A stretch of 64,000 bases of DNA. It comes from Podarcis cretensis (taxonomy: Eukaryota). Made by a program: the position numbers and the translations under genes. Positions 345 through 62,651 of this stretch are shown piece by piece. The first letter of the stretch is position 1; each line of letters begins with the position of its first letter. The notes beneath the pieces were generated by a model that made no database searches, was not told the origin of the DNA, and saw only the letters and a program-made list of their open reading frames with translations. The stretch covers positions 32,240,001-32,304,000 of the forward strand of contig OX638161.1 of assembly GCA_951804945.1 (NCBI GenBank), in the 5' to 3' direction.

Positions 345-480
345 TTCAGCTCTGGTAAAGAACATACAATGCATGGGAAAAGTCCCAAGTTCAGTCTCTG
401 TAACATACAGTTAAGTTGAACAAATACTTTTGTCTAAATCCATGGAGATCCACTGTGGGCAAGTATGGCCAACCCTGAGC
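345..480 (+). mobile_element. Old tRNA-derived SINE relic (Squam3-like)
   Basis: Decayed A/B-box-like head and body similar to relics at ~19970-20100 and ~26385-26540. Confidence 0.4.
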
Positions 481-494
481 TGCTGTGTGTTCAT

Positions 495-578
495 TTCCCA
501 CCAAGCACACAGCTTTGGGAGGGAGGCACATGGAGCGGTGAGGGAGGAAGGCCCACTGCTACTGCCTTCCTAGCCAGC
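495..578 (-). pseudogene. RN7SK: 7SK RNA pseudogene fragment (old, CpG-decayed)
   Basis: cacacagctttgggagggaggcacatggagcggtgagggaggaagg matches the 7SK copy at ~21910-21965. Confidence 0.8.
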
Positions 579-849
579 TTCAACCATCTGGAGGCCTCAT
601 TGAAGGACCCTCCCTTGCAGTGTCTTGCCAGAGTATTTGAGTATTCGAGAGCAAAGCGTGGCAGCATTAAAGAGCCCACAGCTCTTTGCTTTAGCCACGT
701 TGTTACAGCTCTTCATCCCAAAAAGCCGCATGTGTCATATACTCTCAATTCTATGCTCATGATGCCAAGTTTGCAGGTTCTCAATTAATTCTGAGCAAAG
801 CCAATGGGCCTTTTCTGGGCTTCGCCAGGTGACTCTATAACCCTGCTGT

Positions 850-5068: not shown

Positions 5069-6022
5069 ATGACGGAAATGAGAGAAATGGCTAACCAATC
5101 TACTCCAACAGAGTTCCATCTCATGGGGTTTTCTGAAACCCGTGATTTGCAGATTTTGCATTCTGCAATGTTTCTCTTCATTTACTTAACAGCTTTAGTG
5201 GGAAATTCTCTCATCATCACAGCTGTGGCCCTAGACCGCCACCTTCACAGCCCAATGTACTTCTTTTTGATCAACCTGTCATTGTTTGATGTGTGCTCCA
5301 TCTCCACCACTGTGCCCAAGTCTATCGCCATTTCAGTGACAAACAACAACATGATTTCTTTTGCTGGATGTGTGACACAGGTCTTCTTAGTGGTCACATT
5401 TGTTGGTGGGGAGCTTGCCTTGCTCACTGTTATGGCTTATGACCGTTATGTAGCGATCTGTCGTCCACTGCAATATACCTTAATCATGAATCAGGATGCC
5501 TGTATCCAATTGGCAGCTACTTGCTGGATAGGCAACCTGATCCATGCTGTACTGGAAACCAGTTTTACTTTCAAACTAAATTTCTGTGGAACCAATATGA
5601 TTGGACAATATTTTTGTGACATTCCTCAATTGCAAAAGATTTCTTGCAGTGATACAAAAGTGAGTCAAATTCTAATTCTTGTCCCTGGTTTTTTTCTGGA
5701 CTCTTTCTTTTTTACCTTCATCTTTACTTCCTATGGCTACATATTTTCTGCTGTGCTGAGGATCCCATCTGTCCAAGGCAGATATAAAGCTTTCTCTACC
5801 TGTACTCCTCACCTGACTGTCTTTTCTTTATTCATCATCACAGCTGTGTTTTCATACATGAGACCGAAAGCACTTTCTTCCCCCACAGTGGACTTGGTTT
5901 CTGCTGTATTATATACAGTTTTACCACCGGTTCTTAATCCCATTATTTATAGTCTCAGGAACAAGGACGTCCAACTGGCAGTCTGGAAAATACCCAGAAA
6001 ATTAAAACAGCTTGTAGCATGA
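5069..6022 (+). CDS. Olfactory receptor, OR14-like, intact (conserved start probably 5087, MANQS)
   Basis: 317 aa ORF with LHSPMYFFL, MAYDRYVAIC, KAFSTC, PVLNPIIYSLRN; acceptor tttgcag ends 5067. Confidence 0.97.
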   Translation: MTEMREMANQSTPTEFHLMGFSETRDLQILHSAMFLFIYLTALVGNSLIITAVALDRHLHSPMYFFLINLSLFDVCSISTTVPKSIAISVTNNNMISFAGCVTQVFLVVTFVGGELALLTVMAYDRYVAICRPLQYTLIMNQDACIQLAATCWIGNLIHAVLETSFTFKLNFCGTNMIGQYFCDIPQLQKISCSDTKVSQILILVPGFFLDSFFFTFIFTSYGYIFSAVLRIPSVQGRYKAFSTCTPHLTVFSLFIITAVFSYMRPKALSSPTVDLVSAVLYTVLPPVLNPIIYSLRNKDVQLAVWKIPRKLKQLVA

Positions 6023-9780: not shown

Positions 9781-10716
9781 ATGGCCAACCAGTCTACAGT
9801 GACAGAATTTCTTCTGATGGGGTTTTCCAGTGACCCAGAAGAACAATTTTTTTACTTTGTGATATTTCTCTCCATTTATTTAATAGCCTTAGTGGGAAAT
9901 TTCCTCATCATCATTGCTGTTGCCCTAAACCACAAGCTACACACTCCTATGTACTTCTTTCTGGTCAACCTATCATTATCAGACATTTGCTACATCTCAA
10001 CCACAATCCCAAAATCCATAACTGCTTCTTTGTCAGATGACAAAAGGATTTCTTTTGCTGGTTGTGTTGCACAGGTTTTCTTAGTTTTGACTTTTGCAGG
10101 TTCTGAGCTTGCCTTGCTCACTATCATGGCTTATGATCGCTATGCTGCAATCTGCCATCCTTTACAGTATGAGCTAATCATGAACTGCGATGCCTGCATT
10201 CAAATGGCAGCTGCTTCCTGGATAAGTAACCTAATCCATTCATCATTACATACCATTATCACTTTCAGGCTACATTTCTGTGGGTCCAATATTATTGGGC
10301 AGTATTTCTGTGATATCCCTCAGTTGCTAAAGATTTCTTGTACTGACACAAAGGTTAATCAAATTTTGATTTTTGCCATAGGGATTACAGTAGCTTCATT
10401 TTGTGGAGGGTTCATCTTTGTTTCCTATGGCTACATCTTCTCTGCAGTGTTGAGAATCCCTTCTGTTCAAGGTAGATATAAAGTTTTCTCTACCTGCATC
10501 CCCCACCTGACTGTCTTTTCTTTATTTATTAGCACAGATTTGTTTTCATATATGAGTCCTAAAGCACTTTCTTCTACAACAATGGATTTGCTCTCTGCTG
10601 TATTGTATACGGTTTTGCCACCACTACTGAATCCCATTATTTATAGCTTTAGGAACAAAGACATCCAAGAGGCTGTATTGAAAATACCAAAAAGAATTAG
10701 AAGACTCCTAGCATGA
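9781..10716 (+). CDS. Olfactory receptor, OR14-like, intact
   Basis: 311 aa; LHTPMYFFL, MAYDRYAAIC, KVFSTC, PLLNPIIYSFRN. Confidence 0.97.
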   Translation: MANQSTVTEFLLMGFSSDPEEQFFYFVIFLSIYLIALVGNFLIIIAVALNHKLHTPMYFFLVNLSLSDICYISTTIPKSITASLSDDKRISFAGCVAQVFLVLTFAGSELALLTIMAYDRYAAICHPLQYELIMNCDACIQMAAASWISNLIHSSLHTIITFRLHFCGSNIIGQYFCDIPQLLKISCTDTKVNQILIFAIGITVASFCGGFIFVSYGYIFSAVLRIPSVQGRYKVFSTCIPHLTVFSLFISTDLFSYMSPKALSSTTMDLLSAVLYTVLPPLLNPIIYSFRNKDIQEAVLKIPKRIRRLLA

Positions 10717-11804: not shown

Positions 11805-12069
11805 GGATTCATGTGTAGGTTCATTTTGTTTCCTATGGCTACATCTCCTTTGCTGTGCTGAGAATCCCTTCTGTTCAAGGTAGATATAAAGTTTTCTCTA
11901 CCTGCATCCCCCACCTGACTGTCTTTTCTTTATTTATGAGCACAGCTGTGTTTTCATACATGAGACCTAAAACACTTTCTTCTACAACAATGGATTTGCT
12001 CTCTGCTGTATTGTATAATGTTTTGCCACCACTACTGAATCCCGTTAATTTATAGCTTTAGGAACAAAG
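11805..12069 (+). pseudogene. 3'-partial duplicate of OR 9781-10716 (TM5-TM7)
   Basis: Near-identical to ~10405-10660, lacks the 5' part, frameshift at cccgttaattta. Confidence 0.93.
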
Positions 12070-20712: not shown

Positions 20713-21645
20713 ATGAACAACCAAACTACTGCAACAGAGTTCCTTCTTATGGCATTTTCTGATGATCGTGATGTGCAGGTTTTGCATTCTGTGGTGTTTC
20801 TCTTCATTTACTTAACAGCCTTAATGGGGAATTTTCTCATCGTGACTACTGTGGCCTTAGACCACCACCTACACAGCCCCATGTATTTCTTTTTGACAAG
20901 CTTGTCATTTTTAGATGTTTGCTATATCTCTACTACTGTACCCAAATCCATAGCCATTTCACTGACAAACAAACTGATTTCTTTCGCTGGATGTGTCACA
21001 CAGGTCTTCTTAGTGATCACATTTGCTGGAACTGAGATTGCCTTGCTCACAGTCATGGCTTACGACCGTTACATAGCAATCTGCTACCCACTTCAATATA
21101 GTCTAATCATGAACTGGGAGGCCTGCATCCAAATGGCAGCTGCTTCCTGGCTGAGCAGCATGGTTAATGCATTATTGGAAACCACGGTCACGTTTAGATT
21201 AAGCTTCTGCCACTCCAATATTATTGGGCAGTTTTTCTGTGATTTGCCTCAGTTACAAAAGATTTCTTGCAGCGATACTAAAGTTAGTGAAGTTTTGCCA
21301 TTTGTCACTGGGCTCATTGTGGCCTCCTTTTGTACTGTGTTCATCTTTGTTTCTTATGGCTTCATCTTCTCAGTTGTGCTGAGGATTCCATCAGCTCAAG
21401 GCAGGTATAAAGCTTTCTCTACCTGCACTCCCCACCTAACAGTCTTTTCTTTATTTATAATAACAGCTGTGTTTTCGACCTTGAGACCTAAATCACTTTC
21501 CTCCCCTGCTGTGGACTTGGTTTCTGCTGTATTGTATACAGTGTTGCCACCGGTTCTGAATCCCATCATTTACAGCTTCAGAAACAAGGACATACAGAAC
21601 GCAGTGTGGCTAATACCTAAAAAAATTAAAAGTCTCATTGCATAA
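20713..21645 (+). CDS. Olfactory receptor, OR14-like, intact
   Basis: 310 aa; LHSPMYFFL, MAYDRYIAIC, KAFSTC, PVLNPIIYSFRN. Confidence 0.97.
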   Translation: MNNQTTATEFLLMAFSDDRDVQVLHSVVFLFIYLTALMGNFLIVTTVALDHHLHSPMYFFLTSLSFLDVCYISTTVPKSIAISLTNKLISFAGCVTQVFLVITFAGTEIALLTVMAYDRYIAICYPLQYSLIMNWEACIQMAAASWLSSMVNALLETTVTFRLSFCHSNIIGQFFCDLPQLQKISCSDTKVSEVLPFVTGLIVASFCTVFIFVSYGFIFSVVLRIPSAQGRYKAFSTCTPHLTVFSLFIITAVFSTLRPKSLSSPAVDLVSAVLYTVLPPVLNPIIYSFRNKDIQNAVWLIPKKIKSLIA

Positions 21646-21811
21646 CTGAACACAGGCACATTTTTGTAAACAATATATCTGGAAAGGCCAAATGAAAAAC
21701 TGAGTTTATACTTTAAGGGGAACATCCTAAGCATAAGAAACTGAAATAAAGCAAACCTAACATATGCTAAATCAGCATAAAGTACATCAGATCCAAATGC
21801 TGTTCAGGAGC

Positions 21812-22047
21812 CTTGAGCTTGTTTGGAGGTTCTAGCAGGGGAGCACAGCTATCGTATACCCTTGACCGAAGAACGGTACACTCCTTCTATCTGGGATGGT
21901 CGTCCTCTTCCACCGAGTGTACAGCTTCGGGAGGGACGCACGTGGAGCGGTGAGGGAGCAAGGGGACACCCGCCTAGCCAGCCAGATCAGCCGAATCAAC
22001 CCTGGCGATCAATGGGGTGACAGATGTCGCAGCCAGATCGCCCTCAC
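21812..22047 (-). pseudogene. RN7SK: 7SK RNA retrocopy (approx. nt 5-240), part of an inverted chimera
   Basis: Reverse complement reads GTGAGGGCGATCTGGCTGCGACATCTGTCACCCCATTGATCGCCAGGGTTGATTCGGCTGATCTGGCTGGCTAGGCGGGTGTCCCC...GAACCTCCAAACAAGCTCAAG, the vertebrate 7SK sequence; insertion flanked by an 18-bp TSD. Confidence 0.96.
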
Positions 22048-22303
22048 TTTTTTGTAAGCTTTAAAAGTAATAAATATTTTTTTAAAAAAAAAACAAAAAC
22101 AAATGCTGTTCAGGAGCACAGCTAATGCTGGTTTAGATGACATAAGCCTAGCAGAGGGAAAATAGGCCATTAAAGTAGTGTTTGAGTCACAGCATCATTT
22201 TTGCTGGCTTAGCTTATGTTGGGCTATCAGGTCACGTGACTGAGCTGACCATACTTACATTCCAACCAAAGTCCTTTATCTCTAGTCTGCAACCCCCATC
22301 CTA

Positions 22304-22304
<1 letters not shown>

Positions 22305-22347
<43 letters not shown>

Positions 22348-36771: not shown

Positions 36772-37461
36772 TAAAAAGCATAATAACAGGCAGCATAATA
36801 CTAAGATAATCATATTAACACATGACTGAATAGAGTTAATGATTTCAAATTTCTATCTAAGCACTGAACCAAGCAGCTGTTAATTGCAGGTGTGGAAGGG
36901 AATGATTTTCATTAGGACTGCAACACACAGGGAAGAGAGGGTTAACGTCTTTCATCAAATGTCAAGGTCCTGATAAAAATCACTCCCTTCAATTTGCCAT
37001 TGGACCTGGAAGGAATGTTTCCATTGGCATCAATGAGAATGTTCCTTTATAAGCCAAAAGCAACTTGGGGAAGGGAAACACTTTTTGGTAGGAATGTGTG
37101 GGTGGGAAAGGAGTTAAAACTCCCCTCCCCAAATGTAGCAGACCTCACATCTGCCATGCTACTAATGATTCCTAATACATACACACATCACAACTAGTTT
37201 GGCCCTAAGAGTCATGTTCTGTTCTTCAAAATAAGTGTCAGTGGTGATGCTCCAACTTTTGCCCCATGACTACTTTTTTTAGTGGGAGAAATGAAGTTTG
37301 AGAACTGCATGTAAAAAAAATCAAATAACTGCACATTTTGAATGACGGCTTTCTTTAATTCCAGACTTTGGTTTGAAAAGTGTGACCTGGGTAGTTTCTC
37401 AGTAAAAAAAAATATTTTAATCTCCATCTCTAATTGTGATGAAGTGAAGAGTGTTGACATG

Positions 37462-37462
<1 letters not shown>

Positions 37463-37505
<43 letters not shown>
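37463..37505. repeat. (ATT)n microsatellite
   Basis: Direct. Confidence 0.95.
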
Positions 37506-37579
37506 GAAATTTGATTGGATAAATTATGTTAGTTTCACTTTGGTCCCATTGATACCAATGTGAAAAATCAGGGTGCCAC

Positions 37580-56595: not shown

Positions 56596-56784
56596 AGTAA
56601 CTTTGCTATCTAAAGCAGCATTTTTATATATTCTGTCACTCCTATTTTATATAATAAACCAAGCTTTCTTTGTTTCTTTGTGTGAGAACTTCTTGTGGGC
56701 ATAAGATTAGGGGTTAACACACATCCATCACAAGAACACGTCGTAACTCCAGCAAAAGATCCTAAACTTCTCAGCTGTATGTAA

Positions 56785-56785
<1 letters not shown>

Positions 56786-56826
<41 letters not shown>

Positions 56827-62469: not shown

Positions 62470-62618
62470 TAGTAAGCAACAGCTCAATAAAGACATCTGA
62501 AGGAAGCCCTGTTTAGGGAAGTTTTTAATGACTAATGTTTTGATGTATTTTAAATCTTTTGTTCGAAGCCGCCCAGAGTGTCTGAGGAGACCTAGCCAGA
62601 TGGGTGAGGTAGAAATAA

Positions 62619-62648
<30 letters not shown>
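62470..62648 (+). mobile_element. L2-type 3' end with (TTA)n tail
   Basis: gccctgtttagggaagtttttaatg...gccgcccagagtg...ccagatggg...aataaa(tta)n. Confidence 0.7.

Positions 62649-62651
<3 letters not shown>

What the first reader, a model, noticed from the sequence alone, without database searches (positions are those of the whole stretch)
21794..22117. Inverted 7SK-polyA chimeric retroinsertion with 18-bp TSD (trans twin priming?)
Seen: TSD CAAATGCTGTTCAGGAGC (21794-21811 and 22100-22117) encloses antisense 7SK (21812-22047, reaching almost the 7SK 5' end), joined to a sense ~50-nt 3' end with AATAAA (22069) and an A-rich tail. Established: long TSD plus polyA is the L1 TPRT signature; U6-L1 chimeras are co-oriented; 5' inversions arise by twin priming on the same RNA. 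Inference: the second nick primed on a different RNA (7SK), implying 7SK is present in the L1 RNP. The TSD end ggagc|cttgag resembles the 7SK complement ggac|cttgag, consistent with priming microhomology. With the second relic at 495, this may be a recurrent lineage-specific pathway. It lies about 165 bp past the OR3 stop and adds a polyA signal and antisense-7SK sequence to its 3'UTR.
Basis: partly seen in the sequence, partly recalled or inferred. Interest (0 to 1): 0.8.

Follow-up and report, generated by a model that had tools for sequence, protein, structure and literature searches.

The report
Backwards 7SK copy joined to polyA end
Just past an olfactory receptor gene lies one retro-insertion made of a backwards 7SK RNA copy joined to a short polyadenylated RNA end; it is real and best explained by reverse transcription from both sides of one DNA break, but the same 7SK chimera, with the same breakpoint, is already published for human L1.

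Summary
Window 21812-22047 is a minus-strand copy of 7SK RNA, nt ~5-240 of 331 (Rfam, 220 bits). It is followed by a 36-nt AT-rich plus-strand piece with AATAAA and an A10CA5 tail. A perfect 18-bp duplication encloses the whole insertion.

Three things support it:
- The 7SK piece ends in the apical loop of hairpin 3.
- It has the size of the standard internally primed 7SK unit.
- Only the polyA side has an L1-endonuclease-like nick site.

It is not new. Inverted snRNA/L1 chimeras and this model were published in 2015. Three human antisense 7SK/L1 chimeras (nt 15-238, 10-235, 12-238) were published in 2026. 7SK in L1 particles was published in 2013. Other notes of this scan list similar chimeras elsewhere in this genome.

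Not shown here:
- That the tail is L1-derived.
- That an empty site exists.
- That the insertion lies in the receptor's 3'UTR.

One unexplained extra: a 12-nt exact match between 7SK and the target, spanning the second break.

The parts
21794..21811 (.). Left copy of the 18-bp target site duplication. Its 3' end (GGAGC) is the inferred top-strand primer for the 7SK cDNA.
   Evidence: Exact repeat of 22100-22117.
21812..22047 (-). 7SK RNA retrocopy, nt ~5-240 of 331, antisense to the polyA tail. It is 3'-truncated in the apical loop of hairpin 3 and keeps 14 CpGs.
   Evidence: Rfam RF00100, 220.3 bits, E 1.4e-60. The structure line puts model nt 233-245 in a hairpin loop. CpG count.
22048..22083 (+). 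36-nt AT-rich 3' end of a second, polyadenylated RNA (LINE or mRNA, not identified), with AATAAA at 22069-22074.
   Evidence: No other copy in the window.
22084..22099 (+). A10CA5 tail abutting the right duplication copy.
22100..22117 (.). Right copy of the 18-bp target site duplication.
22113..22124 (+). 12-nt stretch of the pre-insertion top strand (last 5 nt of the duplication plus the first 7 nt of the right flank). It is identical to 21840-21851 inside the antisense 7SK part, so it is complementary to 7SK nt ~199-210. It spans the second-strand break.
   Evidence: These are the only two copies in 64 kb. Chance is about 2e-4 to 1e-3.
21788..21799 (+). First-strand nick site read in the polyA orientation: CAGATC|CAAATG, i.e. 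TC|CAAA, a loose match to TT|AAAA.
   Evidence: It passes the '1T/3A' criterion used in Table S3 of PMC13174262.
20713..21645 (+). Intact olfactory receptor gene (310 aa) upstream of the insertion. This is context, not part of the insertion.
   Evidence: ORF. Pfam 7tm_4, 170.5 bits.
21745..21750 (+). Native AATAAA between the receptor stop codon and the insertion.
417..589 (-). Old, degenerate 7SK-derived relic. Only about 60 nt (roughly 497-553) is clearly alike. It has no duplication or tail.
   Evidence: cmscan 27.5 bits, E 1e-4, below the gathering score of 35. Sequence.

Best explanation
This is a single target-primed reverse transcription event by a polyA-dependent LINE, L1-type by inference, in which both ends of the staggered break served as primers on two different RNAs.

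Step 1 (inferred): the endonuclease nicked the bottom strand at the left edge of the future duplication (top strand TC|CAAA). That end primed on the A tail of a polyadenylated RNA and copied only about 36 nt of its 3' end.

Step 2 (inferred): the top strand was broken 18 nt downstream. Its 3' end (...GGAGC) annealed in the open apical loop of hairpin 3 of a 7SK RNA, at nt ~240. It was extended to within 4 nt of the 7SK 5' end.

Step 3 (inferred): the two cDNA ends were joined (21812-22047 to 22048-22099) and the 18-nt gap was filled, giving the duplication.

The anatomy is shown directly: one perfect duplication, opposite orientations, the break positions, and the tail. The order of events and the enzyme are inferred.
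For: - One perfect 18-bp duplication encloses both parts. The A tail abuts its right copy and the 7SK 3' break abuts its left copy.
- The 7SK part has no duplication of its own, and neither does the tail.
- The 7SK identity is beyond doubt (220 bits).
- The 7SK break (nt 240) lies in the middle of the 13-nt apical loop (model nt 233-245) in Rfam's structure line.
- The 236-nt piece matches the standard internally primed 7SK unit. By my count, about 9 in 10 of the 98 human tailless 7SK retropseudogenes listed are 228-249 bp. Noll et al. state that truncations fall in single-stranded regions.
- Three independent human 7SK/L1 chimeras are antisense and span nt 15-238, 10-235 and 12-238.
- The nick site is endonuclease-like only in the polyA orientation (TC|CAAA, against GT|GCTC in the 7SK orientation). 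Doucet et al. reported the same asymmetry for inverted U5/L1 chimeras.
- AATAAA sits 9 nt before the A run.
- Unchecked notes of this scan list further head-to-head 7SK, U2, U5 and mRNA chimeras and intact L1s in the same genome.
Against:
- The tail is too short to assign to L1, and there is no L1 3' end in the window to compare it with.
- The nick site is only a loose match to TT|AAAA.
- Junction microhomology is weak.
- The joint between the two cDNAs shows no microhomology.
- A parent transcript that already carried antisense 7SK next to this tail cannot be excluded without the whole genome.
Confidence: 0.72

Rival explanations
1. An ordinary 5'-truncated retrocopy of one polyadenylated transcript (mRNA, lncRNA or LINE read-through). 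That transcript ran antisense through a 7SK gene or pseudogene close to its own polyA site. The chimera would then exist at the RNA or parent-locus level, and only one priming event would be needed.
For: Structurally it would also give duplication, antisense 7SK, tail and polyA, then duplication. 5' truncation with short microhomology is common for L1-mediated copies (background in PMC2912911).
Against: Both edges of the 7SK part coincide with edges of the canonical internally primed unit: nt ~5 at the joint and nt ~240, in the loop, at the duplication. In this rival, the retrocopy's 5' truncation would have to fall by chance within a few bases of that hotspot. The three human cases show the same coordinates with L1 as partner.
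Confidence: 0.12
2. The primary event was an internally primed ('tailless') 7SK retrocopy in the minus orientation, primed at the break on the top strand. The 52-nt A/T-rich piece at its 5' end would be filler, either non-templated or made by template jumps, and not a second primed RNA.
For: Tailless 7SK copies of this size flanked by duplications are common in human and are noted in this genome. The filler is 89% A+T and of low complexity.
Against: The top-strand site GT|GCTC does not look like an endonuclease site, while the other end does. The piece has AATAAA at the right distance from a 16-nt A run that abuts the duplication. This is the signature of a primed polyA RNA (chance about 0.04-0.07). 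A jump would require an RNA with a U-rich 5' end and an A6 3' end.
Confidence: 0.09
3. Two independent insertions: one landed exactly at the edge of the other.
For: Nested insertions are common in repeat-rich genomes.
Against: There is only one duplication, it is perfect, and it encloses both parts. Neither part has flanking repeats of its own. The second insertion would have to hit the junction base exactly.
Confidence: 0.03
4. An assembly artefact joined a 7SK-containing read to this locus.
For: I could lay no reads.
Against: A perfect duplication, an A tail and a loop-precise break are biological signatures. Fifteen public runs from several studies hold at least half of the sampled words of the 1.3-kb stretch, although this does not resolve the junctions.
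Confidence: 0.02

Closest known systems
Human antisense 7SK/LINE-1 chimeric insertions (Cell Genomics 2026, PMC13174262, Table S3 sheet '7SK')
   Same: 7SK is antisense to the polyA-bearing partner inside one duplication. The 7SK segment is nearly the same (human nt 15-238, 10-235, 12-238; here ~5-240). The authors invoke twin priming for antisense chimeras.
   Different: The partner there is a recognisable L1 of 0.5-2.5 kb. Here it is a 36-nt unidentified polyadenylated 3' end. The host here is said by other notes of the scan to be a lizard, which I did not verify. The duplication here is longer and perfect (18 bp against 7-9 bp).
[quoted passage not shown] 2015, PMC4476161)
   Same: A 3'-truncated small RNA in inverse orientation to the partner. 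The truncation lies in a single-stranded loop. The endonuclease consensus is seen only in the partner's orientation. One of their partners was also a non-repeat 'unknown sequence'.
   Different: A different small RNA (7SK). Their cases show clearer junction complementarity than I can show here without the species' own 7SK gene.
Tailless retropseudogenes of 7SK (Schmitz 2004; Noll et al. 2015, PMC5322556; Ichiyanagi-type survey PMC2912911)
   Same: The same ~236-240-nt 7SK unit, 3'-truncated at an internal single-stranded site, with no A tail on the 7SK 3' end.
   Different: Tailless copies stand alone within their own duplication and are primed at the first (endonuclease) nick. Here the unit shares its duplication with an inverted polyA RNA end and was apparently primed at the second break.
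[quoted passage not shown]
   Same: Two reverse transcription reactions from the two ends of a staggered break, giving an inverted 5' part and a sense 3' part with A tail inside one duplication (described).
   Different: Classical twin priming uses one L1 RNA for both primers. Here there are two unrelated RNAs.
U6/L1 chimeras by template switching or RtcB ligation
   Same: A small nuclear RNA and a polyA partner inside one duplication.
   Different: Those are co-oriented with a full-length U6 at the 5' end. Here the small RNA is inverted and 3'-truncated, which template switching cannot produce.

Membership tests
7SK RNA-derived sequence (Rfam RF00100) | Score above the family's gathering threshold with the covariance model | tested here: met
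   220.3 bits against a threshold of 35, E 1.4e-60, minus strand.
7SK RNA-derived sequence (Rfam RF00100) | A functional gene would be full length (nt 1-331) with the 3' hairpin | tested here: not met
   Only nt ~5-240 are present. The rest of the model alignment is forced onto target DNA. This is a retrocopy, not a gene.
L1-type target-primed insertion | Target site duplication of about 7-20 bp enclosing the insert | tested here: met
   18 of 18 identical, at 21794-21811 and 22100-22117.
L1-type target-primed insertion | A tail abutting the 3' duplication copy | tested here: met
   A10CA5 at 22084-22099.
L1-type target-primed insertion | Nick site resembling TT|AAAA | tested here: inconclusive
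   TC|CAAA. It passes the loose 1T/3A rule of PMC13174262 but matches only 4 of 6 positions of the consensus. The site preference of this host's L1 is unknown.
L1-type target-primed insertion | Clean empty site in an allele or relative | not testable with these tools
Paralogous receptor flanks in the window stop being alike at the stop codon.
Inverted small-RNA/LINE chimera by twin priming on two RNAs (Doucet 2015; Cell Genomics 2026) | Small RNA in opposite orientation to the polyA partner, with both inside one duplication | tested here: met
Inverted small-RNA/LINE chimera by twin priming on two RNAs (Doucet 2015; Cell Genomics 2026) | Small RNA 3'-truncated at a single-stranded region, with its 5' end at the internal joint | tested here: met
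   The break at nt 240 lies inside the loop of model nt 233-245. The joint is at nt 5.
Inverted small-RNA/LINE chimera by twin priming on two RNAs (Doucet 2015; Cell Genomics 2026) | Partner is a LINE-1 3' end | tested here: inconclusive
   There are only 36 nt with AATAAA. No copy or L1 3' end is present in the window for comparison. No genome-wide search was available.
Inverted small-RNA/LINE chimera by twin priming on two RNAs (Doucet 2015; Cell Genomics 2026) | Complementarity between the top-strand primer end and the small RNA at the junction | tested here: inconclusive
   Against the Rfam consensus there is 1 nt for certain, 3 of 5 with a G-U pair, or 4 of 5 with a bulge. The species' own 7SK gene was not available.
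Tailless retropseudogene (Schmitz 2004; Noll 2015) | 3'-truncated RNA copy without an A tail, standing alone between its own duplications | tested here: not met
   The truncation and the lack of a tail on the 7SK 3' end are met. However, the duplication also encloses an inverted polyA RNA end.

The most novel reading that the evidence does not exclude
The second template may not have been picked merely because 7SK rides in the LINE particle. It may have been caught by base pairing with the unwound top strand. 7SK nt ~199-210 are perfectly complementary to 12 nt of the target that span the second-strand break exactly, 5 nt on one side and 7 nt on the other. If this is general, complementarity between abundant nuclear RNAs and the displaced top strand would decide which RNA is captured in trans twin priming. 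It might also decide where the second break falls. After the cut, the end would re-prime in the nearest open loop of the same RNA molecule.
Probability: 0.13. Interest if true: 0.55.

Novelty: new member of a known kind. Interest (0 to 1): 0.3.

Why it matters
This is a clean, base-resolution example, probably young given the perfect duplication and 14 retained CpGs. It comes from outside mammals, if the other notes of this scan are right that the genome is a lizard's.

The 7SK break is at the same place (nt ~235-241) as in three human L1 chimeras and in most human tailless 7SK copies. This argues that the open loop of 7SK hairpin 3 determines where reverse transcription starts, and that host- or lineage-specific factors do not. 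It also suggests that the machinery behind polyA-type insertions in this genome can prime from both ends of a break on separate RNAs.

It does not open a new question. The pathway, the 7SK case and the 7SK-L1 particle association are all in print. The 12-nt complementarity across the second break is the only element that could lead somewhere new, and it rests on a single locus.

Tried and rejected
Only local scripts on the window file touched them.

(3) Paralogous empty site. The receptor paralogues in the window resemble this locus only up to the stop codon.

(4) Origin of the tail. There is no second copy in the window at up to 3 mismatches or by blastn; the only hits are A/T runs. The scan's notes found nothing by sequence.

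(5) Other polyA-plus-duplication insertions in the window that could supply an L1 3' end: none. This is the only one in 64 kb.

(6) The target as an old 7SK relic, which would explain the 12-mer: rejected. Similarity does not extend beyond the 12 nt.

(7) The relic at 417-589 as evidence of recurrence: rejected as uninformative.

(8) Age from divergence to the Rfam consensus: not attempted, because that consensus spans metazoans and is not this species' gene.

Full report
**What is there**

- The minus strand of 21812-22047 is a 7SK RNA copy (RF00100, 220.3 bits, E 1.4e-60, gathering score 35). It is the only family match in the 64 kb.
- The well-aligned part runs from model nt 5 (window 22047) to model nt 240 (window 21812).
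- The global model alignment continues to 21750, but with few identities and many broken pairs. An exact second copy of 21794-21811 sits at 22100-22117 next to unrelated sequence, which shows that this stretch is target DNA and not 7SK.
- Between the 7SK 5' end and the right repeat lie 36 nt of 89% A+T sequence, with AATAAA at 22069-22074. Nine bases later comes A10CA5.
- The 18-nt repeat is perfect and cannot be extended on either side.
- In the whole window this is the only A run followed by a convincing duplication.

**Context**

- The insertion starts 166 nt after the stop codon of an intact 310-aa olfactory receptor ORF (20713-21645; Pfam 7tm_4, 170.5 bits). This ORF is one of about ten such ORFs in the window.
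- A native AATAAA lies at 21745-21750, about 60 nt before the insertion. It is therefore open whether receptor transcripts reach the insertion at all.

**Anatomy and mechanism**

The A tail abuts the right repeat, so the bottom strand was nicked at the left edge of the repeat and primed on a polyadenylated RNA.

- Read in that orientation the site is TC|CAAA. This is a loose match to the L1 TT|AAAA consensus, and it passes the 1T/3A rule used in PMC13174262.
- Read in the 7SK orientation the site is GT|GCTC, which is not endonuclease-like.
- Doucet et al. reported the same asymmetry for inverted U5/L1 chimeras and took it as evidence that the small RNA is recruited at the top-strand break.

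On the plus strand, the left repeat is followed directly by the complement of 7SK running from nt 240 down to nt 5. This is what extension of the top-strand 3' end (...GGAGC) on a 7SK RNA template would give. A single reverse transcription run from the A tail cannot produce it, because it would need an antisense 7SK template.

In Rfam's structure line the hairpin loop of the third stem-loop covers model nt 233-245. The cDNA therefore started in the middle of a 13-nt open loop.

The 236-nt length matches the standard internally primed 7SK unit:
- Of the 98 human tailless 7SK retropseudogenes listed in the part of Noll et al.'s supplement that I read, about nine in ten are 228-249 bp (my count).
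- That paper states that truncations coincide with single-stranded regions.

Neither part has flanking repeats of its own. Two separate insertions are therefore very unlikely.

**The rival I take most seriously**

The strongest rival is a copy of one transcript that already carried antisense 7SK next to this tail. It would require the retrocopy's 5' truncation to fall by chance on the 7SK hotspot. I give it about 0.12. Only a whole-genome search can settle it.

**Comparison with what is known**

The pathway is in print.

- Doucet et al. 2015 (PMC4476161) described 3'-truncated U1, U2, U5 and one U6 copies inverted relative to L1 within one duplication. The breaks were in a loop and there was junction complementarity. 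[quoted passage not shown] One of their partners was a non-repeat 'unknown sequence'.
- The 2026 Cell Genomics catalogue (PMC13174262) adds 7SK. Three of its four 7SK loci are antisense to L1 and span 7SK nt 15-238, 10-235 and 12-238. This is practically the segment seen here.
- Goodier et al. 2013 (PMC3753637) recovered 7SK RNA, HEXIM1, MEPCE and CCNT1 with L1 ORF1p particles. They found HEXIM1 as the top two-hybrid hit of the ORF2p endonuclease domain.
- Reptile precedents for related events exist. These include U6 chimeras with L1, L2 and RTE, and 3'-truncated U6 copies in Anolis, and tailless 5S and U2 copies in Anolis.
- Other first-stage notes of this scan, unchecked by me, list a second antisense 7SK/L1 chimera, tailless 7SK copies, and U2, U5 and mRNA head-to-head chimeras in the same genome. 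One follow-up reached the same 'real but published' verdict for a U5 case.

I therefore file this as a new member of a known kind. The 'lineage-specific' idea is not supported.

**What remains weak**

(a) The tail. AATAAA at the right distance from the A run has a chance probability of about 0.04-0.07 given the composition. A polyadenylated pol II-type 3' end is therefore likely. Nothing identifies it as L1: there is no other copy and no L1 3' end in the window.

(b) Junction microhomology. Against the Rfam consensus only the G at nt 241 is shared for certain. The species' own 7SK gene was not available.

(c) The relic at 417-589 is below Rfam's threshold (27.5 bits) and has no duplication or tail. 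It says nothing about recurrence.

(d) No empty site.
- The look-up of sequencing runs returned 21 holders from 8 studies under coded names.
- From then on I worked beside those places and sent no letters of the 7SK part to any search tool.
- I did not verify the host species.

**An extra observation**

The 12 bases GGAGCACAGCTA occur twice in the window and nowhere else.
- One copy is inside the antisense 7SK part (21840-21851, the complement of 7SK nt ~199-210).
- The other is at 22113-22124, which is the last 5 nt of the duplication plus the first 7 nt of the right flank.

Before insertion, the top strand was therefore perfectly complementary to 7SK over 12 nt centred on the second break.

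Estimates of chance:
- The antisense 7SK part contains three GGAGC sites. That one of them is followed by exactly the seven flank bases has a chance of about 2e-4.
- None of 2976 random 60-mers of the window reached a 12-nt match, apart from the two that overlap the old relic.
- A 425-nt neighbourhood reaches the same local score in 2.3% of trials, before position is taken into account.
- The target shows no wider similarity to 7SK.

The cDNA did not start at this match. It started 28 nt further 3' on the RNA, in the loop.

My tentative reading has three steps. 7SK was held at the site by pairing with the unwound top strand. The cut fell within that hybrid. The freed end then re-primed in the nearest open loop of the same molecule. 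This rests on one locus and was noticed after the fact. I give it about 0.13 and list the test that would decide it.

**Verdict**

The novelty and lineage-specificity claims are not upheld. Interest is modest (0.3).

Noticed in passing
window 21840-21851 and 22113-22124: A 12-nt exact match between the antisense 7SK part and the pre-insertion target, spanning the second-strand break. These are the only two copies in 64 kb. The match is not used as the cDNA start and is unexplained.
   Followed up: partly
window 21745-21750: A native AATAAA lies 100 nt after the receptor stop codon and 60 nt before the insertion. The receptor transcript may end before the 7SK insertion.
   Followed up: no
window 417-589 (-): An old, degenerate 7SK-derived fragment (27.5 bits, below threshold). 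About 60 nt is clearly alike, there seem to be internal deletions, and there is no duplication or tail.
   Followed up: partly
window 22075-22093: T7 is directly followed by A10, forming a short A/T palindrome at the polyA site (repeat finder I3). In the RNA, the tail could fold back on the U run.
   Followed up: no
window 22303-22347 and onward to about 22400: An (ATA)n microsatellite of about 45 nt is followed by sequence that recurs at 37450-37506, 56782-56826 and 62576-62649. This is probably a dispersed SINE-like repeat with a microsatellite tail.
   Followed up: no
window 5069-61881: About ten intact ORFs of 305-340 aa are spread on both strands. The ORF next to the finding (20713-21645) matches the Pfam olfactory receptor family 7tm_4, and its 3' coding part is 78-83% identical to 5777-6007, 10471-10714 and 11879-12067. 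This looks like a tandem olfactory receptor cluster.
   Followed up: partly
whole window: This is the only A-tailed insertion with a convincing target duplication in 64 kb. PolyA-type retroposition is sparse in this region.
   Followed up: partly
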